The translations under genes and the position numbers were made by a program. This document shows positions 4,825-41,587 of a stretch of 64,000 nucleotides of DNA, piece after piece. Position 1 is the stretch's first letter, and each line of letters starts with the position of its first letter. The notes under the pieces were generated by a model that worked only from the letters and a program-made list of their open reading frames with translations, ran no database searches and was not told where the DNA came from. The stretch spans positions 62,001-126,000 of the IMG/VR virus record IMGVR_UViG_3300043446_004437; one strand, given 5' to 3'.

Positions 4825-5076
4825 ATGTCATCACCACTTGAAATGTTTGAAATACTGCAATGGATGAAAGACGCCGGCTGCAAAGGAAATACAGAAGCAA
4901 ACTTCTTTCCAGAAAGCGGCTACACCAAAGAATCACAACTTGCATACGAAATCTGTTCACGATGCAATGTTAAAACTGAATGTTTAAACTATGCTGTTGA
5001 TCGTCCCGAACTTCTTGGTATTTGGGGTGGCACATCACACAGACAACGCCGACACATCCGTATGGGAAGGAAATAA
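4825..5076 (+). CDS. whiB: WhiB-family Fe-S transcription factor #1
   Basis: W..A.C...FFP...C..C.V..EC and GIWGG. Confidence 0.93.
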   Translation: MSSPLEMFEILQWMKDAGCKGNTEANFFPESGYTKESQLAYEICSRCNVKTECLNYAVDRPELLGIWGGTSHRQRRHIRMGRK

Positions 5077-16018: not shown

Positions 16019-16105
16019 GCCCAGGTGGCGGAATTGGTAGACGCAAGGGGCTTAAACCCCCTCGCTATGTGAAATAGCGTACGGGTTCGATTCCCGTCTT
16101 GGGCA
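16019..16105 (+). tRNA. trnL: tRNA-Leu(TAA)
   Basis: GCCCAGG/CTTGGGC acceptor, AGGGG-CTTAAAC-CCCCT arm, long variable arm. Confidence 0.95.
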
Positions 16106-16122
16106 CAATACAAAGGATTTTT

Positions 16123-17568
16123 ATGCGGAATAAAAATTTTGTATACAAGTTTCTGTTATCAGCAACTCTGTTGTCAGCATTACTTGTTAACACAAAAAAT
16201 ACTACAGTTCTAGCTGGAGATGTTGCACCTGCAACTACTACAGTAAAGTTCTACAGAAAGACAACTAATGTTGTTCTTCCAGCTTTAGGAACTGTTGGAC
16301 CAAAAATTGGTATTGATACAGCATACAACAATAACTATCGAGGCCAAGACACTTACATTGTTTTGTTAGATACTGGCATAGAATCATCTCATCCATTTTT
16401 TGGTGGAAGAGTTGCACTTGAAGCATGCTTTACCGCAAGATGCCCTAATGGACAGACTTCTATGGTTGGACCAGGAGCTGCTGCACCTGTTCACTGGCAT
16501 GGTACTCATACTGCAGGAATTGCAGCTGGTGCTAATTCTTCTATTCGTGGAATTGCACCCAGTGCAAAAATTATTGCAGTCAACGTATTTGCATTAGACG
16601 GTTCCGCATCAGATGCCGATTTAATTAGAGCATTACAATGGGTTGATTCAATATCTAACGATTATAATATTGTTGCAGTCAACATGTCTTTAGGCACACC
16701 TGGAACATTTAGATCATCATGCAATTCTTATATTCCTGATCTTACTGCAATTATCTCAACGCTAAAGTCCAAAAATATTGCAACCGTTGTATCTGCTGGC
16801 AACGAAGGCCAAGTTGGCATGAGTTCACCAGCATGTATTACAGATACTGTCAGTGTTGCAGCAACATACTTTTTGGCCGATGGTAGTGACAGAGTTACAA
16901 GCTTTAGTAACGTAAATGAATTGACAGATTTATCTGCTCCAGGATACAACATTGTATCTTCTAAACTCATGGGCTCATATGGTTCCTCTTCAGGAACTTC
17001 AATGTCTGCCCCAATGGTTGCTGGAGCTTTTGCAGTCTATCGTTCTAAGTTTGGCTCACAGCCAGTTGATAAAGTTGTTTCTGATTTTCAATCTACCGGC
17101 ATAAATGCTAAAGATGATTATAGTGGAATTGTTACAAAAAGAATAGATTTTAAATCTATGTTTGCTGGCGGTGGTACAACACCAACACCAACTACCACAA
17201 TTCCAGTCACAACAACAACTGTACCTGGTTCAACAACAACCACTACCGTTCCTTCTGATGAAGATGACGAATCAGAAGATTATTTGAATATTCCTTATAT
17301 TATATCATTAAAGAAATATTCAACAAGATTGTCATATATCCAACTTGATTTTACTTATCGATACACTAACATACCTGTATCTAAATTTATTTTAAGATGC
17401 AGATATACAGATGGTAAAATAGTTGATAAGACAATACCCAACAGAAATAGAACAACTAATTTTTATTTAGTTTCTATTTCTTCTGTTAATATTCGCTCAT
17501 GTAGAATGGCCGCTGTTTCCACTTCTGAAACAATAGGTACATTTTCAAAATATATATTGGTAAAATAA
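16123..17568 (+). CDS. secreted S8 (subtilisin-like) serine peptidase with Thr-rich linker
   Basis: LLDTG, HGTHTAG and GTSMSAP catalytic triad; signal peptide. Confidence 0.95.
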   Translation: MRNKNFVYKFLLSATLLSALLVNTKNTTVLAGDVAPATTTVKFYRKTTNVVLPALGTVGPKIGIDTAYNNNYRGQDTYIVLLDTGIESSHPFFGGRVALEACFTARCPNGQTSMVGPGAAAPVHWHGTHTAGIAAGANSSIRGIAPSAKIIAVNVFALDGSASDADLIRALQWVDSISNDYNIVAVNMSLGTPGTFRSSCNSYIPDLTAIISTLKSKNIATVVSAGNEGQVGMSSPACITDTVSVAATYFLADGSDRVTSFSNVNELTDLSAPGYNIVSSKLMGSYGSSSGTSMSAPMVAGAFAVYRSKFGSQPVDKVVSDFQSTGINAKDDYSGIVTKRIDFKSMFAGGGTTPTPTTTIPVTTTTVPGSTTTTTVPSDEDDESEDYLNIPYIISLKKYSTRLSYIQLDFTYRYTNIPVSKFILRCRYTDGKIVDKTIPNRNRTTNFYLVSISSVNIRSCRMAAVSTSETIGTFSKYILVK

Positions 17569-17650: not shown

Positions 17651-17965
17651 ATGCATTGGTTTGATTCTGCATTATGCAAGGGGTTAACACATATCTTTTT
17701 TGCAAAAGATTCTGAAAGACCACAAGCTACAATAAAGCGCGAGGCAATAGCTCAAAGCGTTTGTAACCAATGTGAAGTTTTTGAACAATGCAGAACATAT
17801 GCTAGAACTCACGGTGAAATAGGATATTGGGCCGGCGAAAATGAATATGATAGATATCTTTTGGGCTTTATGCCCAAAGGTGGTTTTGGTCCAATTACCA
17901 GATCCGTTAGTGCTTACGCAAAAAGAAAACAACAATTACTTAAAAAGGAAATAACAACATCATGA
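17651..17965 (+). CDS. whiB: WhiB-family protein #2
   Basis: W...ALC...FF...C..C.V..QC and GYWAG. Confidence 0.9.
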   Translation: MHWFDSALCKGLTHIFFAKDSERPQATIKREAIAQSVCNQCEVFEQCRTYARTHGEIGYWAGENEYDRYLLGFMPKGGFGPITRSVSAYAKRKQQLLKKEITTS

Positions 17966-23954: not shown

Positions 23955-24281
23955 ATGTTCATTCAACGCAAGCCTTGGATGCAGGAAGCATCATGTGTTG
24001 AGCAAAGTTTAGATATATTTTTCCCCAACAGATATACAGAAAACACCGTTTCTAAACCATTTTCTGTATGTGAACAGTGTTCTGTTAGATGCGAATGTTT
24101 ATACGAAGCTATGACAACTGAATCTGTTGGCATATGGGCGAAAACAACAGACTATCAAAGATCAGTTATCATGTCTAGATTTTTTAATGATAACCCAAAA
24201 AATATTAACATTGACACAATATTCCAGATCGTTGAAAACAATAATTATTCTATACCAATTTCATTAAAATACGATCAATAA
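23955..24281 (+). CDS. whiB: WhiB-family protein #3
   Basis: WMQEASC...FFP...C..C.V..EC and GIWA. Confidence 0.9.
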   Translation: MFIQRKPWMQEASCVEQSLDIFFPNRYTENTVSKPFSVCEQCSVRCECLYEAMTTESVGIWAKTTDYQRSVIMSRFFNDNPKNINIDTIFQIVENNNYSIPISLKYDQ

Positions 24282-28013: not shown

Positions 28014-29744
28014 ATGCAAGAAGAAGAAGTGCAGCCTCAAGTAACCCTTGATCAGCTTCAATATTTTTGGATGCCGTCAGGCGTTCCATGTTTTATTGCT
28101 GACAGGGATACAATTTGTGATATTGTTGAAGACATTGGCTTTAACATATATTATCTTTTGGCCAACAAAAAGACAGTGAAAACAATTCAGCAGCCTGCAA
28201 ATAACAACAAAGTTGGTTACACCACCACAACCCAGCCTGTGCAGGTTGCTACTTACAATTCTTCATTATTTAAGGTTGTGAATAATTTTGTTGGTAGGGT
28301 AATTAAACCATCTGATGATGAATTGCCAGCAGAGTTTTATGTTGCAGAAGAGTGTTGTGAATACAACATGCCTGAATTGCCTTACGTTCTTGTTGAAAAG
28401 ATGGATCAATTCTTTAGACTTGTTTATTCTCAGCACGGCACGGAGTCAATTGTTCTTCTTACTTACGATACAGAAAAACAGGGATCTGATGGTTGGGGTG
28501 TTTTAGTTCCTGATCAGGTAAATACTCCTGCTCACTGCAAATACGATGCGGACAGCATCGCTGCAATCAAACCAGAAAATGTTATGATTGTTGGTTCTGT
28601 TCATAGTCATCCAGAAATGTCTGCGTATGCTTCTGGTACCGACCACGCAGATCAAGCAGATTTTGATGGTCTTCACATCACCTATGGTTGGCAGAAGAGC
28701 GTCAACAATGGCGCCACTCAGTACCACATAGAACTTCAGATGTCTGGATCTTCTTATACCTTGAAACCTGAAGATGTTTTTGAGAATTTTTATATTCAAA
28801 AAGAACCTGATTCTGAAGTTGTAGAATGGTCTACTAAAGTAAAAAAAGCACACCCCCCTATAGCGGGGGGAGTCAGCACGTCGGCACCAGCGCAGGTTCC
28901 AGCGCCGTACAACCAGTCTCATCGGGCTCAACAACCGTATCAAAACTCGACGCAACATACGGCGGCTGGGGAGCCTACGATTGGTAAAAGACTTTTAACC
29001 AAACACTGGAACGACATGGTTGCCGATCTTGGTGACAATGCCATTGTTATTGTTGAAGCAGACCCCCAAATAGCTTATGCTTCAATATGTCCTGCTTGCG
29101 ATTACGATCTTGATACTCAAGATTTTAGAGCAGGATATTGTGCTTGTTGCGATGTTCCAGTTGTGTTAAACAGTCATAGTATTTTTCAAATAGCTTCGAT
29201 ATACAACAGATATTGTCTTGAGAGATCTTTAGATCCAACTCAAATGGTTCCATATTTGTATGGTGAAAACGAAAAGTTTGAACACTTTTTGATGAAACTA
29301 AATATTGAACAAGAAATACACGATATACACAAATATAATTATGGCATAGATGACGATGAAGATGTTCCATTAAGTTTAATAGAATCTTCTGATAATTATG
29401 ATTATTATCACAGTCTAAACGATAATGATTATGATGGAACAAAAACCATATGTTGCAATACACCTATGGAAAATTACATTAATAACTGTAATTGTCTTGT
29501 TCCAATTCTTTATGAAGATTTAAGTGCATTTGAATCGGCAGTTGAAACTATTGAGCTTTATGACACTAATTCTTCTTGTATATATTGCGCTCATTATTAT
29601 ACTCCTGCATGTCCTGCATATCGTTATTTATTAACTCAATATGTTACAAATAAATACGGTTTTGATCTTGAAACCCAAAGAAACGGCATAATACCGTGCA
29701 CTCATTATGAGTCAATGTATGCAGATACATTAGAAAAGGAATAA
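28014..29744 (+). CDS. JAB/MPN+ metallo-isopeptidase with Cys-rich C-terminal extension
   Basis: TESIVLL Glu and HSHPEMSAYASGTD (HxH-x7-S-x2-D). Confidence 0.9.
   Translation: MQEEEVQPQVTLDQLQYFWMPSGVPCFIADRDTICDIVEDIGFNIYYLLANKKTVKTIQQPANNNKVGYTTTTQPVQVATYNSSLFKVVNNFVGRVIKPSDDELPAEFYVAEECCEYNMPELPYVLVEKMDQFFRLVYSQHGTESIVLLTYDTEKQGSDGWGVLVPDQVNTPAHCKYDADSIAAIKPENVMIVGSVHSHPEMSAYASGTDHADQADFDGLHITYGWQKSVNNGATQYHIELQMSGSSYTLKPEDVFENFYIQKEPDSEVVEWSTKVKKAHPPIAGGVSTSAPAQVPAPYNQSHRAQQPYQNSTQHTAAGEPTIGKRLLTKHWNDMVADLGDNAIVIVEADPQIAYASICPACDYDLDTQDFRAGYCACCDVPVVLNSHSIFQIASIYNRYCLERSLDPTQMVPYLYGENEKFEHFLMKLNIEQEIHDIHKYNYGIDDDEDVPLSLIESSDNYDYYHSLNDNDYDGTKTICCNTPMENYINNCNCLVPILYEDLSAFESAVETIELYDTNSSCIYCAHYYTPACPAYRYLLTQYVTNKYGFDLETQRNGIIPCTHYESMYADTLEKE
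28841..28870 (+). promoter_or_regulatory. putative -1 programmed ribosomal frameshift signal
   Basis: A AAA AAA heptamer in frame, 5-nt spacer, CCCCCC-TATAGC-GGGGGG hairpin. Confidence 0.75.
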
Positions 29745-29746
29745 TT

Positions 29747-30505
29747 ATGAACCCTAAACGTTTTGTTGTTATAGGAGCTGGTGGCGTAGGCACATGGCTT
29801 ATTTCAGGTTTAGTAAGATTGCTTGAATGGAAAGCTCCAGGTTCAGGTTTGATAATTGTTGACGGCGACAATTATGAACAAAAGAACAAAGAGCGTCAAG
29901 AGTTTACAAAAATTGGCAATAAAGCTGTTGTTAAAGCTCATGAACTTACACCTAGTTTTCCAAAAACAACTATTATTCCTGTACCCAAATGGGTTGTAGG
30001 AGACGACTTTAAAGGAGTTACGACAGATGAAGATTCTCCAAAAATTAAAGCATCAGCTTTATTATCTGAAGGAGATGTGGTCTTTGCGGTTGTCGATAAT
30101 TTTGCTGCGCGCAAGATTATTTTTGATGCGGCGTCGCGGTTAGACAACATTGATGTATTTACTGGTGGCAACGACGATGCTTTATTTGGTTCAATATATC
30201 ATTATCAAAAAAGAGATGGCGTTGCTATAACAGAACATCCAGCAGTGTTTCACCCCGAATATGATAACGCACCAGACAAAAATCCTGGTGAATTATCATG
30301 TCAAGAAAGATCTGAAATAGAAGGTGGAACACAGTTACTTGCCACTAATATGGCAGTTGCTGCATTTATTCTTGGTAGAGTACAAAAGACAATTGTGCTA
30401 GACCAAAGCCCCGAAGAAACAGAGATATATTTTGATTTAGGTATCGGTAAATCCGAACCATATAACAGAATGGTATCTTATGTTTCAGAACCTGTTCAAG
30501 TATAA
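29747..30505 (+). CDS. ThiF/E1-like activating enzyme
   Basis: IGAGGVG, VDGD..E.KN..RQ, NKA, VDNFAAR, candidate catalytic Cys in ELSCQER. Confidence 0.92.
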   Translation: MNPKRFVVIGAGGVGTWLISGLVRLLEWKAPGSGLIIVDGDNYEQKNKERQEFTKIGNKAVVKAHELTPSFPKTTIIPVPKWVVGDDFKGVTTDEDSPKIKASALLSEGDVVFAVVDNFAARKIIFDAASRLDNIDVFTGGNDDALFGSIYHYQKRDGVAITEHPAVFHPEYDNAPDKNPGELSCQERSEIEGGTQLLATNMAVAAFILGRVQKTIVLDQSPEETEIYFDLGIGKSEPYNRMVSYVSEPVQV

Positions 30506-30523
30506 ATAAAATAAGGAGCAATC

Positions 30524-30775
30524 ATGGAAAACAATATGTCAAACGCTTCCGCATCTCAGCCAACTGGTATGGCAAATTTGAGGTTTGGTGTTTACAACCA
30601 GCCTACAAATGTTGCTGGAAAATCTGTTCAGCAAGCGCGCGAACAGTTTTCTAAAATTTGGGGTATCCCAAATGACGCAGTTGCTTACAAGGGCAAGGAC
30701 AAGCTCGACGAGAATTACGTTATTCAGCCAGGTGACAACGTAGAATTCCACCGTCGTGCCGGCGAGAAGGGCTGA
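30524..30775 (+). CDS. ubiquitin-like (beta-grasp) protein ending RRAGEKG
   Basis: 83 aa, C-terminal Gly, VIQPGDNVEF strand, directly after E1, strong RBS and C-ending codons. Confidence 0.8.
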   Translation: MENNMSNASASQPTGMANLRFGVYNQPTNVAGKSVQQAREQFSKIWGIPNDAVAYKGKDKLDENYVIQPGDNVEFHRRAGEKG

Positions 30776-30794
30776 TTAATTCAGTCATAAGATC

Positions 30795-30840
30795 GTGGGA
30801 AGGCTCTAATTTCCGCTAATAGAGCCTTCCCACATTTTTT
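30795..30840 (+). terminator. Rho-independent terminator
   Basis: 14-bp stem gtgggaaggctcta/tagagccttcccac followed by a T-run. Confidence 0.85.
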
Positions 30841-30874
30841 TTAAAAGGCGTAAGTCTATCTATCAGGGGAAAAA

Positions 30875-32479
30875 ATGTTATTTGATGAAATAAAACTTGG
30901 TTATCCATCTTTATGGCTTAAAACCACAGAATATTCAAGAGCCGCAGAAAGTTTAGTTTCTTATGATTTTAGAGACTTTTATACAATAAATTTTGAGTCT
31001 GGCTTTTCTCAGTATGTTGGTGGTGCATGGAAAACAATTCTTATAGAATCTATAAATCCAGAAAATGGAGAAACAATCCATCAATCTACATTTGATCCTT
31101 CTGTATCGTTAAATTATTTACTTAATCTTAAATCAGATAAGCCAGTTACTTATTTGCTACCAATTTTAGGCAAACCTGATTCTGTTCTTCTTCCATACAT
31201 TTCTTTTGTTGCTGCTTTAAATGATAATTACAGAAAGAACTTTTGGCTTGATAATATTGAAGCAACATCGCTTCAAGTAGTATTTATATCTTCTGCCGAT
31301 GCTCCAGAAGAATATTTGCATATGTTTAAAACTGTTCAGTTTTCTTATCCTAATTCAGAAGAACTTTTTACAGTAGTTAATCATATCGATACTTCTTCTG
31401 CTGGAAGATTTGTTGATCAAAATGAAATCAAAGATATTGTTCGTTCTGGCTTAGGTCTTACAGAAGATCGTTTTGTTGATCTTTGTTTACGTTCTATTGT
31501 CAACAACAATAAGATTGATAGCAAATATGTTTATGATCAAAAGATGGCTCATATTAAAGAAGCTGGTATTTTGGAGATTATTAAACCTAAAATATCTTTT
31601 GATAATATTGGTGGCTTAGATAATATTAAAGATATTATTCAAAGAACAAAACTATTGTGGGCTAACCGGGAACAAGCAAAATCTTTTGGCGTTGTTCCGA
31701 TTAGAAGAGTTCTTATGGTGGGCGTTCCCGGCACCGGCAAGTCTGCTATTTGTCAAGCAACTGCGAAAGAACTTGGCCTTGACTTGGCCCGTACTGGCAT
31801 TAGCCAAGTTATGAACTCTTTTGTCGGCAAATCAGAAGCAAACATGAGAGCTGTTTTTGATCAGATTAAAATGATGACTCCGCTTTGTGTTTGGATCGAC
31901 GAGTTTGGTCGCGATCTTTCAGGTGGCTCTAGCAGTTCTCATGTTGACGCAGGCACTACTGATCGTGTTCACGGTGAATTTTTGACAGGATTGCAGGAAC
32001 TTCCAGAAGATACTTTCCTTATGTGTGCCGCAAACCAGCTAGATAATCTTCGTCCAGAAATGCTTCGTGCAGATCGTTTCGACAAGATAGTCTTTGTTGG
32101 TTTGCCTTCACATCAAGAAAGAAAAGATATCTTTAAAATTATTCTTAAAGATATTGAAACTGATCACATCTTTGATTACGATGCACTTGCGGAAAAAGCA
32201 CAGTACTTTACTGGCGCAGAAATTACCGCACTAATCAAAGAAGTTAAATTCTTTGTTGTTTCTTCACAACTTCGACCAATCAATACTCAAGATATTATAT
32301 CTTATATTCCTACTGTAAGAAATATTCTCTGGAACAAAAACAGAGATATGATTAAAAACATGTATCAGTATGCTCTTGAACAATGGGATTGGGCTTCTAC
32401 TGAACAGCTACAAGATGCTAAAATGATTATACACGGTACGAGAAGCAACTCTGATAAAGACTTAGCTTGGAAAATATAA
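30875..32479 (+). CDS. classical-clade AAA+ ATPase (Ycf46-like, degenerate N-terminal module)
   Basis: GVPGTGKS, WIDE, AANQLDNLRPEMLRADRFD second region of homology. Confidence 0.92.
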   Translation: MLFDEIKLGYPSLWLKTTEYSRAAESLVSYDFRDFYTINFESGFSQYVGGAWKTILIESINPENGETIHQSTFDPSVSLNYLLNLKSDKPVTYLLPILGKPDSVLLPYISFVAALNDNYRKNFWLDNIEATSLQVVFISSADAPEEYLHMFKTVQFSYPNSEELFTVVNHIDTSSAGRFVDQNEIKDIVRSGLGLTEDRFVDLCLRSIVNNNKIDSKYVYDQKMAHIKEAGILEIIKPKISFDNIGGLDNIKDIIQRTKLLWANREQAKSFGVVPIRRVLMVGVPGTGKSAICQATAKELGLDLARTGISQVMNSFVGKSEANMRAVFDQIKMMTPLCVWIDEFGRDLSGGSSSSHVDAGTTDRVHGEFLTGLQELPEDTFLMCAANQLDNLRPEMLRADRFDKIVFVGLPSHQERKDIFKIILKDIETDHIFDYDALAEKAQYFTGAEITALIKEVKFFVVSSQLRPINTQDIISYIPTVRNILWNKNRDMIKNMYQYALEQWDWASTEQLQDAKMIIHGTRSNSDKDLAWKI

Positions 32480-32487
32480 GGATAAAT

Positions 32488-35266
32488 ATGTCAGATCAAA
32501 TTGATTTTTCTAACATTGAAGAAGTATTAGAAAGCATACAAGTAGATAAAGATGTTCCCAACAACCATTCTTTATCTGCAAATAAACAGTATGATCAGGA
32601 CCTTTATAAAAAATGGTTTCGTTCTAAAACACAAAGCGGATTTCTTTCTATCAAACCATGGTATCAAGGTTTGAAATTTAAGATTGATATTGGTAAAACA
32701 TCTCCAGATGGAAAGCTTTTAGGAAGCACTATGGTGTTTGTCGACGCCATAGATTTTGCAGCATATTTAGATTCTGTTGTTAACGGTACAGCAAAACTTA
32801 ATTTTCCCGCCAATGAAAAAAATGGTAGCGTTACAGATGAATCTTTTGTTTCCTATGGCGGTGGCATCATAGAATCAAAACCAATATCAAGAATATTTAA
32901 ATCTCACTATTGGCAGAACTCTGACAAATCTTATGATTCTAATGCATTCGTTTGGAAATGCGGACATTTTGCTGCACGTAAAACAGAAAGCGGAGCTTTT
33001 ATTCCAAACATGTCTTCACCTGTATCTGTAGACTCAATTAAAGTTACAAGACAGGATCTTGTAAGCATTTCTTATATGCTAAAATTGTCACTAACATCTC
33101 ACGTGACAAACAATCCTGATTGGTATAACATATAATTATGACTGATAACTACACTGAAGCTAACATTGAAATAATGACTAAGATTCTTTCTTCTTTAGTT
33201 GAAGAAGTATATCAAAAAATATTAACTGATATCGAGTCTCAGTTTAAAGATATACTTGCAAAATTAGAAAAATATGAAGATCAAGTTGCGACAATAGTGT
33301 ATGCTTATGGAGAGCAAGCTATAGTTATGGAAGCGTTAACTTCCCAACTTGAGTATGCTACTCCAGAAGCTCAAAAAGCTTTTACTGATAGTTTATCAGA
33401 GCAACGAAAGAAAATGATACAGGTTCTCAATGAAAGCTCTAAAGGATTTATGGCCGACAACGATCCAGGAATTGCAAGAGCCCTTGGCAACCTGGTTGAA
33501 AAAAAGTTATCTGACACAAATTAATAACAATGAATGCGTGTTATTTGTAGATAAACATAATTATTTACTTTTACAAAATATTGTTTATCTTTCACAGATA
33601 TATCCTCTTGTTAAATCATTATGTCCTGAATTTAAATCTTTACATTTATTAGAAACAAATCTTTTAACTTATTTAAGACAATCAAAAATAGAATTGTATT
33701 CTGTAGAGGTAGTATAATGCTTATAACTAATTTTAATGATATTTCTTCTTTTAACCATTTTTGGAATGATGGCATTGATAGACTGCACAACTGCAGGCCA
33801 CTTACAGAAGAACTGTATGTTTTATTATCTTTTAATCGGTTAGATATAGTCAAAGCTCATGTAGAGTCCGGAGCATCAGTATCTAACTATGTTGAACAAA
33901 TTCAACAAAATCTTCCTGAACAATATCAAACTATCGTTTCGGAATACCATACAAAATTTAAATCCGAACACACTGCGTACGTTTATCCTTACAGTTCAAC
34001 AAAATTCTTTAACAGTATGTTTAAAGAAATTTTACCCTCCGCTGCAAAAAAACTTTACTCATTAATTTTTAATGATTCTTCTTTTATACAAATGTATGAT
34101 TCAACTGCAACATCTTTCAAAGGATGTATCTTATTTAAGATTGTTCCTACTTTAAAGAACTTAAAAGAAATAAATAATATAGTTTTTAACACAGTTTCAT
34201 CTGATTCTGTCGCAGTTCTTCAAGATGTATTATCTCATATACAGCTAATAGTAGAAGACAATGAAGCTTACAAAAATTATATCTTAGAACTTGAATCTGC
34301 TGTAATTAATCTAAACAGTAAAATAGATCTTCTTCAAAAAGAAGGCATGAACGGTTATCTTCTTAGCTGGCATTAATGTGAAAAGGAAATATATATATGT
34401 ATAAAATAAAAACTTCATTAAGCGGCTCATCATATGCTGCTATCCCTGTTGATTCAGTCAACAGTATGAATTTATTTGTAAATCAATACAGTAAAATTCC
34501 TTTAAATAAAGTTGTTTACGATTACTTTAATACAGGTCAAGTATATGTAAACTTCCCATCTAGCTCAGGTAAGATTCTTGGTTTTTCTGATACTATGTGC
34601 ACCATACTCGTCAGGTATGTTGTCAAGCCTTCTTTCTTTAACCAGTTTGATGATAATCATACTTTTGAAGTTCCTAGTTGGGCTACTAGGTTCGTTGATG
34701 ATCAGTTAAATGGCTGGATGCTTGATATTGGTTTAGTCTTTGAAATTGACAGTTCACCTGCTGCAAATCCAATCTGTAAACATTATACTGGTTACACTTC
34801 TGAAAACAATTATGTAACTTCTAAAAATTATTTGTTTGCCAACAAACCTAATTCTATTAGATCTAATTGTTCAAATTCAAAAGTTTATGTGAATAAACTT
34901 ACTCCACATTCATGCATATACAGTGATACAAAAACTCCTTTTGTTAGCTGTCCTTTTTATGAATATGATTATGAAGTAGTTGAAAGTTTTCAAATACACA
35001 AAAACACGCATTCTCCACAAGAATTTGAACTAAGATATATTCCTTGTTCAGATAGCTTTGCAATATATCATTTTTATGATATTACAAATAAACAAATTAA
35101 TTATTCTATCTTTGAAAAAGATACACCAGAATTAAAAGATACTGTTATGTTGGCTGTAAATGAAATCATTTCATCTTACTCTAACTATGAAGTTAAACAA
35201 ATTCAAAATCAAGGCGTTTCTGTCAGTGCGCCAGAAAAGAAAAGCTACATACTTTCTTTAGTCTGA
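32488..35266 (+). CDS. five hypothetical ORFs (32488-33135, 33138-33524, about 33538-33717, 33717-34376, 34397-35266)
   Basis: Contiguous ORFs without recognisable motifs. Confidence 0.7.
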
Positions 35267-39727: not shown

Positions 39728-40574
39728 TGAAAGATACAATATATACTTATTCTTTTGTTTCTGATCTTAATCAATCTCAGCTTTCTCAATTTGAAGAACT
39801 TGTTACAAAAGATGTCAAAAATGGCTCTGCTCCAGAAGAGTTGGAAATATTAAAATCTAATATTGATTTGTGGCTGTATTTTCTTTCTTCGATTAGAAGA
39901 AACGTAGAATATCATTTATCTTCTCGAACTGCTGCACGCAAAGCAAAAATATCAGAAATGATACAAAATAAAGATTCTAAAGAGCTTCTTGATTCTTTTA
40001 GAAAATCAGAAGATGAGTGGAGAGTAAACGCTATAAAATTTCTTTCTACAATAGAAAAGAAAACTTTATATGTTAAGATGATTGTTAAAGAACAAAAACA
40101 AGCAGAAAAAATACAGTATCTTTAATGCAGCCCGTATTACATTGTCCTGAAATAATACATTCAATTGAAGCAACTTTAGATGAAGAAGATTCATTTGAAC
40201 TCGTAAAAAATTTTTCTCAGGTTTTTCCTTTTTATTATCATTACAGTGTCTCTCAACATGGCTTTAAACAGGTTCTTGATTTAGCTACTACTTTTTCTGC
40301 TCTTCATTCTAGAGTAAAAATAAAAATAAGTGGTTTTGAACAAACAATAAATTCATCTATTCCTTTAGATGTTTTACGTTACAAGATGCTTCCAGATGGC
40401 TCTTATTGCTCTCTAGGAAGCTCTAGGATCGCTAATCAACCTAGTTACATAGTAGAGGGCGCTTTATGGTCAAATGGCTTTTATTATTTGACTAGAGAGC
40501 AAGATTCAATTAACATACTTGATTTACATTTTTATGTTGACCAGTATACAAAAACGATGCACAGGTACATATGA
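39727..40574 (+). CDS. two hypothetical ORFs (39727-40125, 40125-40574)
   Basis: TAATG coupling. Confidence 0.7.
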
Positions 40575-40861
40575 CAATTAAATCTTATTTTTTCCGCGAT
40601 AGTTCTTTTATAACTAATGTTTCCTATAGTGAAGATACAGAAGTTTTATATATTAAATTTAATTCTGGTACCACATGGGTTTATTATGATGTATCTCAAG
40701 AAGTTTATAATAGACTTGTAAAGTCTACTTCTGTTGGTGAATATTTTAATAAAAACATTCGAAATAAATATTCATCTCAAAGAATTAATTATAAAATTGA
40801 GGATAGCCAAAATGTCCAGGAACAAGAAAAAGAAGAAAAAGAACAGAAATCTTTATCATAA
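40571..40861 (+). CDS. KTSC-domain protein
   Basis: SSFI..V.Y......LYI.F.SG..W.YYDV....Y..L..S.SVG.YFN..IR. Confidence 0.9.
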   Translation: MTIKSYFFRDSSFITNVSYSEDTEVLYIKFNSGTTWVYYDVSQEVYNRLVKSTSVGEYFNKNIRNKYSSQRINYKIEDSQNVQEQEKEEKEQKSLS

Positions 40862-40975: not shown

Positions 40976-41587
40976 ATGACGACCATCGTTGCTTTACAAG
41001 GTGATAATTTTGCTGTCGTATATGTAGATTCTCGTATATCAACATCTGATTCTTCTGGTTTTATATCGCAGGTTTCTACCTTAAAAGAAGGTTCTGGTAA
41101 AGTAGCATTAAACGGAAAGTATTTGTTGGGTGCTGCCGGAGATGTGAGGGCAATTAACATTTTGCATCACGTTTTTCAGCCTCCTACTCCCCCTCCAAAT
41201 ATGAAAGGTAAAAAACTAGATCAGTTTTTTACTGCTAAGTTTATACCTGCTTTGCGTGAATGTTTTGAGCAGCAGGGATACGCAATGCCAGACATAGAAG
41301 AAAAAGAACATATCGCAGAACAATCTTCAACAATACTTGTTGTTATACATGGCACAATATATGTTGTTGATGGAGATTATTCTTGGATATCTGATTCTTC
41401 CGGAATGTATGCTTTAGGTACCGGAGCACCTTATGCTTTAGGCGCTATGCAAGCATTGAATCTAAACAAAAAACTTACCATACCTCAGGCTAAAAAAATG
41501 GCCTTAAAAGCTTTAACCACCGCTGCCAAATTCGACCCACACACCGGATCTCCTTTTCATTATCATTTACAGGAACAGGCTAAATAG
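40976..41587 (+). CDS. proteasome beta / HslV-like Ntn threonine protease
   Basis: M-TTIVA N-terminus, DSR, conserved Lys, GAAGD, ALGTGA..ALGA, D..TG. Confidence 0.85.
   Translation: MTTIVALQGDNFAVVYVDSRISTSDSSGFISQVSTLKEGSGKVALNGKYLLGAAGDVRAINILHHVFQPPTPPPNMKGKKLDQFFTAKFIPALRECFEQQGYAMPDIEEKEHIAEQSSTILVVIHGTIYVVDGDYSWISDSSGMYALGTGAPYALGAMQALNLNKKLTIPQAKKMALKALTTAAKFDPHTGSPFHYHLQEQAK

What the first reader, a model, noticed from the sequence alone, without database searches (positions are those of the whole stretch)
40976..41587. Propeptide-less proteasome-beta-like protease in the same transcription block
Seen: Met-Thr-Thr N-terminus with Ntn-hydrolase motifs. Established: actinobacteria have 20S proteasomes fed by Pup/Mpa, and Thr1 is the nucleophile. 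Inference: with the Ubl cassette and AAA+, this could form a minimal viral ubiquitin-proteasome-like axis, or it could poison or redirect the host proteasome. It lies 8.5 kb from the AAA+ gene, so linkage is unproven.
Basis: partly seen in the sequence, partly recalled or inferred. Interest (0 to 1): 0.6.

Follow-up and report, generated by a model that had tools for sequence, protein, structure and literature searches.

The report
Phage HslV/BPH-like threonine peptidase gene
A freshwater actinobacterial jumbo phage carries a real, apparently active, ring-forming proteasome-type (HslV/BPH-like) peptidase, but it is a mobile accessory gene already known in many phages and is not tied to the neighbouring ubiquitin-like cassette or AAA+ ATPase.

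Summary
The ORF at 40976-41587 (+) is real and encodes a 203-aa protein that starts Met-Thr-Thr. It passes Pfam Proteasome (PF00227) and PHROG 1040 'peptidase HslV family'. Its model superposes best on BPH and HslV. Thr1, Asp17, Lys33, the Gly-Ser/Thr-Gly turn and Asp166 are conserved in 84 of 84 relatives, and median dN/dS is 0.095. A four-copy model predicts the lateral and two-fold contacts of a stacked ring (0.73 against 0.00 for the best control).

The genome is a complete 216-kb IMG/VR phage with three WhiB genes, from freshwater, so the host is probably an actinobacterium. The Ubl, E1, JAB and Cdc48/PAN-like AAA cassette does lie 8.5-13 kb upstream.

- Complete 97-98-kb phages and phage DSL-LC01 carry 51-73% identical proteases but lack E1, JAB and both ATPases.
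- A subclade of the 200-kb lineage keeps the cassette and the local gene order, yet has an unrelated 121-aa gene in the protease slot.
- The gene tree shows movement between phage lineages.

The protein is not an HslV orthologue, not a 20S beta subunit, and has no HslU partner. It is a new member of the phage 'group I' proteasome homologues. Its physiological substrate is unknown.

The parts
40976..41587 (+). Gene for a 203-aa HslV/BPH-like ('group I' proteasome homologue) N-terminal threonine peptidase (P0001)
   Evidence: ORF and translation. Pfam PF00227 above its cut-off. PHROG 1040, E 6.5e-23. Fold match to BPH and HslV. Median dN/dS 0.095. Self-assembly model 0.73 against 0.00 for the best control.
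40979..40981 (+). Codon of Thr2, the predicted catalytic nucleophile (Thr1 of the mature protein once the initiator Met is removed)
   Evidence: T2 and T3 are present in 84 of 84 relatives, and 83 of 84 begin MTT. Removal of Met before Thr by methionine aminopeptidase is inferred from established knowledge, as in E. coli-type HslV.
41027..41029 (+). Codon of Asp18, the equivalent of proteasome/HslV Asp17
   Evidence: It lies 16 residues after Thr2, at the end of strand 2 of the model, and is present in 84 of 84 relatives.
41099..41101 (+). Codon of Lys42, the equivalent of Lys33. An insertion of about 8 residues in the preceding hairpin shifts the numbering.
   Evidence: HMMER aligns it with the Lys of the HslV 'K-V' step. 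It is present in 84 of 84 relatives.
41273..41329 (+). Family-specific conserved loop (residues 100-118), modelled with low confidence, following a Pro-rich insertion at residues 68-78
   Evidence: pLDDT is below 50 for residues 108-115, yet G101, Y102, P105, H112, A114, E115 and S118 are invariant in alignment A1. A role as a docking or gating loop is inference only.
41417..41425 (+). Codons of Gly148-Thr149-Gly150, the equivalent of the Gly-Ser129-Gly turn
   Evidence: G148 and G150 are present in 84 of 84 relatives. Position 149 is Ser in 71 and Thr in 13.
41534..41536 (+). Codon of Asp187, the equivalent of Asp166
   Evidence: D187, T190 and G191 are present in 84 of 84 relatives.
40571..40861 (+). 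KTSC-domain gene, the upstream flank of the variable slot that holds the peptidase gene in the 200-kb lineage
   Evidence: Pfam KTSC, E 9.7e-19. It is syntenic in relatives with and without the peptidase.
41667..42029 (+). Zinc-ribbon gene, the downstream flank of the same slot
   Evidence: Weak zinc-ribbon matches. It is syntenic in L108, L110 and L143, where an unrelated 121-aa ORF replaces the peptidase gene.

Best explanation
The gene encodes a phage-borne member of the 'group I' proteasome homologues, the HslV/BPH/AAH/CPH radiation. Shown here: the protein has the proteasome-beta/HslV fold without a propeptide; it has a complete Thr1-Asp17-Lys33 catalytic set with the Gly-Ser/Thr-Gly and Asp166 elements; it is under strong purifying selection; and it has predicted lateral and two-fold contacts of the kind that build stacked rings. 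Inferred: host methionine aminopeptidase exposes Thr2, and the subunits assemble into a double ring that hydrolyses peptides or unfolded proteins inside its chamber during infection. The gene is an accessory, exchangeable gene of freshwater WhiB-encoding actinophages. It sits in different neighbourhoods in different lineages. In this 216-kb phage it lies between a KTSC gene and a zinc-ribbon gene in the replication region. In a 97-kb lineage it lies between a metallophosphoesterase gene and the portal gene. It has moved between lineages. No phage-encoded partner is shared by all carriers: not the Ubl/E1/JAB cassette, not the Cdc48/PAN-like AAA, and not the Hsp100-D2-like ATPase of this genome. 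It therefore most likely works on its own or with a host unfoldase. Its substrates are unknown. The most plausible role is bulk or selective turnover of host proteins to favour the infection.
For: Family and fold. Catalytic residues and the MTT start in 84 of 84 and 83 of 84 relatives, with median dN/dS 0.095. Self-assembly: ipSAE 0.73 against 0.00 for the best of 3 controls. That mark was reached by 20 of 30 proteins solved as pairs and 1 of 23 solved as single chains. The runs agree in at least 79% of contacts and partner pLDDT is at least 79. The interfaces lie on helices H3/H4 and on the lateral faces. Independence from the cassette. No universal ATPase partner; the literature also reports no co-occurring AAA+ for the new proteasome homologues (PMC8665760). 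Different neighbourhoods. The gene tree is not congruent with genomic context, and well-supported branches force at least 2 context switches. Distant cultured-phage homologues sit among early and nucleotide-metabolism genes, not head genes. Actinobacterial host: three WhiB genes, and the nearest named phage is Actinomycetia phage DSL-LC01.
Against: There is no biochemical or expression evidence. No RNA run holds the region. Ring stoichiometry (6 or 7) and activity without an activator are unknown, and HslV itself is nearly inactive without HslU. The self-assembly score may partly reflect the model's memory of solved HslV and proteasome complexes. Within the 200-kb lineage most genomes carry both the protease and the cassette (9 of 12 tested), so cooperation there is not excluded. 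In the 97-kb lineage the gene lies next to the portal gene, and no canonical prohead protease was detected, which leaves a morphogenetic role open. The tree was rooted at its midpoint, on a long DSL-LC01 branch.
Confidence: 0.62

Rival explanations
1. One reading: the peptidase is the proteolytic end of a phage ubiquitin-proteasome-like pathway. The E1 and Ubl would tag substrates, the JAB protein would trim them, and the Cdc48/PAN-like AAA would unfold them into the peptidase.
For: All components exist on one strand within 13 kb. The AAA belongs to the Cdc48/PAN/FtsH clade. 9 of 12 large cassette-bearing genomes also carry the peptidase.
Against: The peptidase is about ten times more widespread than the AAA (452 against 45 viral contigs). 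Complete genomes have the peptidase without E1, JAB or AAA. A subclade keeps the cassette and the local gene order but has lost the peptidase. The AAA has no HbYX-like C-terminus and its tail is variable. The genes are separated by about 15 unrelated replication genes.
Confidence: 0.1
2. In the 200-kb lineage the peptidase pairs with the phage's own Hsp100-D2-like ATPase (P0122; AAA_2 plus ClpB_D2-small; G000:C1:45681-47108, outside the window) to form a two-component ATP-dependent protease that works like HslUV or ClpAP.
For: P0122 has the ClpA/ClpB D2 architecture (AAA_2 E 4e-53; ClpB equivalog region 552-852, E 1e-96). By eye it has a Gly-rich loop at the place of the ClpA peptidase-docking loop (resemblance recalled from memory, not tested). 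According to PMC8665760 HslV is not found in Actinobacteria, so a host HslU is unlikely to be available.
Against: P0122 homologues are present in peptidase-less G016, G017 and G025, and absent from the 97-kb lineage, DSL-LC01 and four cultured phages that carry the peptidase. The two genes lie about 57 kb apart on opposite strands. P0122 could equally dock on host ClpP or act as a disaggregase.
Confidence: 0.12
3. The protein is a capsid (prohead) maturation protease.
For: In 65 of 84 related loci the gene lies one small ORF upstream of the portal gene, which is followed by a 259-aa unknown gene and the major head protein gene. No S78, S77 or ClpP-type prohead protease was detected in G000, G006, G008 or G009.
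Against: In this window, and in cultured phages, the gene sits among replication, nucleotide-metabolism and early genes. DSL-LC01 has both this protease and an S78 domain. The protease is 71-73% identical between lineages whose portal and capsid proteins give no BLAST match to each other, which is unlike a protease co-evolving with its scaffold and capsid substrates. Some members of the 200-kb lineage lack it altogether. A closed double-ring architecture is not known for prohead proteases.
Confidence: 0.07
4. The protein inserts into, caps or poisons the host 20S proteasome (PrcAB), redirecting it.
For: It shares the fold with beta subunits, and many Actinobacteria have 20S proteasomes (established knowledge).
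Against: It scores 15.7 bits against a cut-off of 191.9 on the bacterial 20S beta model. It is only 16-20% identical to beta subunits and has lower TM-scores to them than to BPH and HslV. It has an intact catalytic set under purifying selection, which suggests it is an enzyme in its own right. It is predicted to self-assemble. The host is not identified, so whether it has a proteasome is unknown.
Confidence: 0.03

Closest known systems
HslV (ClpQ), the peptidase of the bacterial HslUV protease
   Same: Both begin Met-Thr-Thr-Ile-Val with no propeptide and are of similar size. Both have the Thr1/Asp17/Lys33 set and the G-S-G turn. The fold matches at TMt 0.68-0.75. PHROG 1040 and JGI annotations use the HslV name.
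   Different: It scores only 27-28 bits against HslV equivalog cut-offs of 137-158. No HslU exists in the phage: its only AAA_2 protein is ClpB/ClpA-D2-like. HslV is reported absent from Actinobacteria (PMC8665760). It carries extra elements: a hairpin insertion before Lys33, a Pro-rich loop and the conserved loop 100-118.
BPH (Betaproteobacteria proteasome homologue; PDB 5ovs, 5ovt, 5ovu)
   Same: It is the best structural match (E 8.5e-12, TM 0.70-0.77) and the best genuine profile-to-PDB match (E 1.4e-5). It also has no propeptide and no known ATPase partner.
   Different: Identity is about 21%. BPH is a cellular protein that forms heptameric double rings, whereas the ring order here is unknown. 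This protein is viral and actinophage-borne.
AAH, CPH and PPH: the phage-associated 'group I' proteasome homologues of Fuchs, Alva and Lupas 2021 (PMC8665760)
   Same: They are compact HslV/BPH-like subunits without propeptides, found in Caudoviricetes phages, with no co-occurring AAA+ partner and unknown function. BFVD holds 44 phage models with this fold at E <= 0.001.
   Different: PPH has about 140 residues and lacks helix H2, whereas this protein has H1-H4, so it is not PPH. Membership of AAH or CPH could not be tested because no reference sequences were at hand. That paper found no Actinobacteria-specific phage encoding AAH, whereas this clade is abundant in WhiB-encoding freshwater actinophages.
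Actinobacterial 20S proteasome beta subunit (PrcB) with Mpa/ARC and Pup
   Same: Same superfamily and the same catalytic mechanism.
   Different: There is no propeptide and no alpha subunit; this is the only PF00227 gene in the genome. It scores 15.7 against 191.9 bits on the PrcB model, and the window's AAA scores 56.5 against 504.75 bits on the Mpa/ARC model.

Membership tests
Proteasome/HslV superfamily (Pfam PF00227; Ntn Thr peptidases, MEROPS T1) | Profile match above the curated cut-off | tested here: met
   29.6 bits against a cut-off of 22.4, E 6.6e-7.
Proteasome/HslV superfamily (Pfam PF00227; Ntn Thr peptidases, MEROPS T1) | N-terminal Thr nucleophile with Asp17, Lys33, Gly47, Ser129 and Asp166 equivalents | tested here: met
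   T2, D18, K42, G52/G55, S/T149 and D187 are conserved in 84 of 84 relatives.
Proteasome/HslV superfamily (Pfam PF00227; Ntn Thr peptidases, MEROPS T1) | Alpha-beta-beta-alpha sandwich fold | tested here: met
   AF2 model with pLDDT 84.6. Foldseek probability is 1.00 to BPH, HslV and 20S beta.
Proteasome/HslV superfamily (Pfam PF00227; Ntn Thr peptidases, MEROPS T1) | Self-assembly into stacked rings | tested here: inconclusive
   The four-copy model scores 0.73 against 0.00 for the best control and shows lateral and H3/H4 two-fold contacts. This is a prediction that may draw on memory of solved complexes, and the ring order was not determined.
PHROG 1040 'peptidase HslV family' | Profile match | tested here: met
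   E 6.5e-23, 82.7 bits, residues 1-200.
HslV proper (HslUV peptidase subunit) | Score above the NCBIfam equivalog cut-offs (TIGR03692, NF003964) | tested here: not met
   27.2 and 28.2 bits against cut-offs of 157.75 and 137.
HslV proper (HslUV peptidase subunit) | A cognate HslU ATPase in the same genome (or in the host) | tested here: not met
   The only AAA_2 protein of G000 is ClpB/ClpA-D2-like, with no HslU model among its matches at E <= 1e-5. Carriers in other lineages have no AAA_2 gene at all. A host HslU could not be tested, but HslV is reported absent from Actinobacteria (PMC8665760).
Bacterial 20S proteasome beta subunit (PrcB) | Equivalog score, a propeptide, and a partner alpha subunit | tested here: not met
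   15.7 against 191.9 bits. There is no propeptide, and PF00227 hits a single place in the genome.
BPH | Heptameric double ring; BPH sequence cluster | not testable with these tools
   BPH is the best structural neighbour but at only about 21% identity. Ring order cannot be derived here.
AAH / CPH (Fuchs et al. 2021) | Clustering with the AAH or CPH reference sequences | not testable with these tools
Only the description in PMC8665760 could be compared.
PPH (Fuchs et al. 2021) | About 140 residues, lacking helix H2 | tested here: not met
   The protein has 203 residues, with H2 modelled at residues 78-99.
   The two are decoupled in both directions.
   The C-terminus ends Trp-Lys-Ile here and is variable among 45 relatives.

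The most novel reading that the evidence does not exclude
Within the 200-kb actinophage lineage the peptidase may be a facultative module that plugs into a phage-encoded unfoldase, either the Cdc48/PAN-like AAA next to the Ubl/E1/JAB genes or the Hsp100-D2-like ATPase P0122. That would give a virus-encoded, tag-directed or ATP-driven degradation machine in hosts that lack HslUV. The evidence rules out an obligate link but not such a lineage-specific partnership.
Probability: 0.1. Interest if true: 0.75.

Novelty: new member of a known kind. Interest (0 to 1): 0.3.

Why it matters
Proteasome-like peptidases in phages are catalogued (PHROG 1040; PPH, AAH and CPH in PMC8665760), but none has a known function or partner. 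This clade is unusually tractable. It is very abundant (452 IMG/VR contigs, and freshwater metagenomes from many studies). It is strongly conserved. Natural presence/absence variants exist at one syntenic slot, and it occurs in hosts reported to lack HslUV. It also fills a gap noted in the literature, which found no Actinobacteria-specific phage with an AAH-like homologue. For the scan, the main value is negative: the attractive 'viral ubiquitin-proteasome axis' reading of this window should not rest on this gene.

Tried and rejected
1. An obligate link to the Ubl/E1/JAB/AAA cassette was rejected by whole-record searches.
2. A single-protein pattern search for AAA relatives found nothing. It worked only after an alignment was built from six fetched homologues.
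3. HslU-like partner: the genome's AAA_2 protein proved to be ClpB/ClpA-D2-like and does not co-vary with the peptidase.
4. Cellular origin or host clue from prokaryote genomes: only two hits turned up, on short contigs of a Cyclobacteriaceae MAG and a gammaproteobacterial MAG. I take these to be binned phage contigs.
5. Expression: no RNA run holds the region. One doubtful 'RNA?' run gave only two 151-base contigs near the gene, which is not usable as evidence.
6. Promoter and terminator scans were not above shuffled expectation.
7. Canonical prohead proteases (S78, S77, ClpP) were not found in G000, G006, G008 or G009. The S77 search rang in no control genome, so that result carries no weight.
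8. The search of 1.84 billion representative proteins (search of protein representatives) and the ESM Atlas search were not run, because the family was already clear.
9. The peptidase-AAA and peptidase-P0122 pairs were not folded.

Full report
OBSERVATION. Window 40976-41587 (+) is an open frame of 203 codons whose product (P0001) starts Met-Thr-Thr-Ile-Val. It passes Pfam PF00227 Proteasome (29.6 bits against a cut-off of 22.4) and matches PHROG 1040 'peptidase HslV family' at E 6.5e-23 over residues 1-200. Sequence matches to solved structures are weak and limited to HslV, BPH and 20S beta chains. One better-scoring hit to a designed alpha-repeat protein is a repeat artefact.

STRUCTURE AND ACTIVE SITE. 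An AlphaFold2 model built on 22 homologues has pLDDT 84.6 and pTM 0.82. It shows the strand and helix order of a proteasome-type subunit, with helices H1-H4.
- Foldseek against the PDB ranks Thiobacillus BPH first (E 8.5e-12, TM 0.70-0.77). HslV from several bacteria follows (TMt 0.68-0.75). 20S beta subunits rank lower.
- Counting from Thr2, Asp18 lies exactly where HslV Asp17 lies.
- Lys42 corresponds to Lys33, after an insertion of about 8 residues in the preceding hairpin.
- The Gly-Ser/Thr-Gly turn (148-150) and Asp187 correspond to Ser129 and Asp166.
- Across 84 relatives taken from viral contigs, these positions are conserved in 84 of 84, and 83 of 84 begin MTT. Median pairwise dN/dS is 0.095 over 133 pairs with usable dS.
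- Family-specific features are a Pro-rich insertion (about residues 68-78) and a loop (100-118) that is invariant at seven positions but modelled with low confidence.
- Four copies folded together score 0.73 (ipSAE) against 0.00 for the best of three controls. That mark was reached by 20 of 30 proteins solved as pairs and 1 of 23 solved as single chains. The runs agree in at least 79% of contacts, and partner pLDDT is at least 79. The contacts are a two-fold H3/H4 interface plus lateral interfaces, which is the pattern that builds stacked rings.
- This supports self-assembly but does not prove it, and it may reflect the model's memory of solved relatives.

THE GENOME AND ITS HOST. The window is bases 62001-126000 of a single 216,024-bp IMG/VR virus record that CheckV rates 100% complete. 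It carries three WhiB genes. The nearest named phage protein (51% identity) is in Actinomycetia phage DSL-LC01, a lake metagenome-assembled phage predicted to infect Actinomycetia. Near-identical DNA occurs in freshwater, lake and aquaculture metagenomes from many studies. An actinobacterial host is therefore likely, but it is not identified.

THE CASSETTE IS REAL. Upstream on the same strand lie these genes:
- a 576-aa protein with a Prok-JAB domain (28014-29744);
- a 252-aa ThiF-type E1 (29747-30505);
- an 83-aa ORF that looks Ubl-like by position and by a C-terminal Gly, though it has no Pfam match (30524-30775);
- a 534-aa single-domain AAA of the Cdc48/PAN/FtsH clade (30875-32479).
The JAB and E1 proteins weakly resemble the PRTRC system proteins, far below their cut-offs.

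THE LINK DOES NOT HOLD. Close relatives of the peptidase occur on 452 IMG/VR contigs. Relatives of the AAA occur on 45.
- Whole-record searches show the AAA, E1 and JAB proteins together with the peptidase in the ~200-kb lineage (G001, G003, G004, G006, G007, G012, G013; G005 has the AAA and E1 but is cut at a contig end before the JAB gene).
- They are absent from G008 (100% complete), G009 (terminal repeats, 100%), G010 (99%), G011, G014 and G015, and from the circular 129-kb DSL-LC01. Those records carry peptidases 71-73% (DSL-LC01: 51%) identical to this one.
- Pfam ThiF finds nothing in them, and Pfam AAA finds only sub-threshold or unrelated hits.
- Four cultured phages with more distant homologues (Microbacterium Pumpernickel, Arthrobacter Pitbull, Moorella MTATph1, Psychrobacter D'Alembert) have no ThiF and no AAA_2 gene. 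Their peptidase genes sit among small early or nucleotide-metabolism genes.
- In the other direction, 3 of 12 large cassette-bearing records lack the peptidase: G016 and G017 (92% complete) and G025.
- In those three the gene order from the JAB gene to the zinc-ribbon gene is conserved. Between the KTSC and zinc-ribbon genes, however, stands an unrelated 121-aa ORF.
- The AAA's C-terminus (Trp-Lys-Ile here) is not an HbYX motif and varies widely among relatives.
Physical interaction was not tested.

OTHER POSSIBLE PARTNERS. The genome has only one PF00227 gene, so there is no alpha subunit. Outside the window (G000:C1:45681-47108, minus strand) it encodes a 475-aa AAA_2 plus ClpB_D2-small protein (P0122) that matches the D2 module of ClpB and ClpA. 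This is a more HslU/ClpA-like candidate than the cassette AAA. It is, however, a core gene of the 200-kb lineage, including the peptidase-less members, and it is absent from the 97-kb lineage, DSL-LC01 and the cultured phages. No phage-encoded unfoldase is therefore shared by all carriers. This agrees with the published finding that no AAA+ co-occurs with the newly described proteasome homologues (PMC8665760).

A MOBILE ACCESSORY GENE. Only about 11 of 83 related loci share the window's neighbourhood.
- In 65 of 84 loci the gene lies between a metallophosphoesterase gene and, one small ORF further on, an SPP1-type portal gene. A 259-aa unknown gene and the major head protein gene follow.
- Of twelve proteins from that neighbourhood, only a VanY peptidase has a BLAST match in G000.
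- In a maximum-likelihood tree of 61 distinct sequences, the portal-context sequences nest within the diversity of the KTSC-context sequences. Well-supported branches force at least two context switches. The root is at the midpoint, on the long DSL-LC01 branch, so the direction of transfer is not established.
- The prokaryote genome collection gave only two hits, on short MAG contigs. BFVD holds 44 phage models with this fold at E <= 0.001, the best being an 'HslV' of an uncultured Caudovirales phage (TM 0.87/0.91, 39% identity).

WHAT IT IS AND IS NOT. It is a member of the proteasome/HslV superfamily and of PHROG 1040.
- It is not an HslV orthologue: it scores 27-28 bits against cut-offs of 137-158, and there is no HslU.
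- It is not a bacterial 20S beta subunit: it scores 15.7 against 191.9 bits, with no propeptide and no alpha subunit.
- It fits the 'group I' proteasome homologues of Fuchs, Alva and Lupas (PMC8665760): compact, propeptide-less, HslV/BPH-like, and partly phage-borne.
- It is not PPH, which has about 140 residues and lacks H2.
- Membership of AAH or CPH could not be tested here.
- That paper reported no Actinobacteria-specific phage with AAH. This clade shows that actinophages do carry an abundant group I homologue.

MECHANISM. Shown: the fold, the catalytic set, purifying selection, predicted self-association, and independence from the cassette. Inferred: Met removal exposes Thr2, and a double ring hydrolyses peptides or unfolded proteins. 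The enzyme acts alone or with a host unfoldase, perhaps through the conserved 100-118 loop, and serves host-protein turnover during infection. The rivals are cassette-coupled degradation, pairing with P0122, prohead maturation, and interference with the host 20S. Each is given its own probability and refuting result in the Rival explanations section.

VERDICT. This is a real and probably active phage peptidase. It is a new member of a known kind. The proposed ubiquitin-proteasome-like axis is not supported by co-occurrence. Interest is modest.

Noticed in passing
G000:C1:45681-47108 (minus strand; outside the window, about 15 kb before its start); protein P0122: A 475-aa protein with AAA_2 plus ClpB_D2-small domains matches only the D2 module of ClpB/ClpA and has a novel N-terminal region of about 140 residues. 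It lies next to a RecA-like gene. It is a core gene of the ~200-kb lineage and is absent from the 97-kb lineage. It could dock on host ClpP, act as a disaggregase, or partner the peptidase.
   Followed up: partly
window 28014-33524: A conserved block runs JAB-domain protein (576 aa, Cys-rich C-terminal half), ThiF-type E1 (252 aa), 83-aa Ubl-like ORF ending in Gly, Cdc48/PAN-like AAA (534 aa), then 222-aa and 128-aa unknown genes. All six are syntenic in every relative examined. The JAB and E1 proteins weakly resemble PRTRC system proteins A and ThiF. No E2 was seen.
   Followed up: partly
L108:20129-20494 (also L110 and L143): In a subclade of the 200-kb lineage, an unrelated 121-aa ORF with no Pfam match occupies the slot between the KTSC and zinc-ribbon genes that holds the peptidase gene here. 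This is a natural presence/absence pair.
   Followed up: partly
L033:8840-14604 (record G009, 98 kb, terminal repeats): In the 97-kb lineage the peptidase gene directly follows, or overlaps by one base, a metallophosphoesterase gene (phrog_20266). It precedes an 89-aa ORF, the portal gene, a 259-aa unknown gene and the major head protein gene. No canonical prohead protease was detected in these genomes.
   Followed up: partly
window about 4861-5055, 17657-17857 and 23976-24164: Three separate WhiB-family genes lie in one phage genome (68.7, 43.1 and 43.8 bits). This fits published reports of multi-whiB freshwater actinophages.
   Followed up: no
window 16099-17568: A 489-aa subtilase (Peptidase_S8, E 2.4e-35) is a second, unrelated protease gene in the same co-directional block.
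   Followed up: no
C-termini of peptidase homologues (alignment A1; loci L016-L092, L001): 68 of 84 relatives carry a short basic C-terminal tail (for example ...TRKPV). Some database homologues have a longer Lys/Arg-rich tail with a Gly-Arg-Pro core that recalls an AT-hook. The window's copy lacks any tail.
   Followed up: partly
window 43092-43124: The strongest terminator-like hairpin of the region (14-bp stem with 8 G-C pairs) lies about 1.5 kb downstream of the peptidase gene on the + strand, near the point where gene orientation switches at 44241.
   Followed up: no
record G018 (IMGVR_UViG_3300042868_009074, 267,766 bp; loci L112, L115): This record holds two copies each of the AAA and of the peptidase gene, about 216-219 kb apart. 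That suggests a concatemer or over-extended assembly rather than a larger genome.
   Followed up: no
G000:C1:127806-128334 (minus strand; just outside the window): A VanY-type D-Ala-D-Ala carboxypeptidase is about 69-78% identical to that of the otherwise unrelated 97-kb lineage. It is a second gene shared between these actinophage lineages.
   Followed up: no
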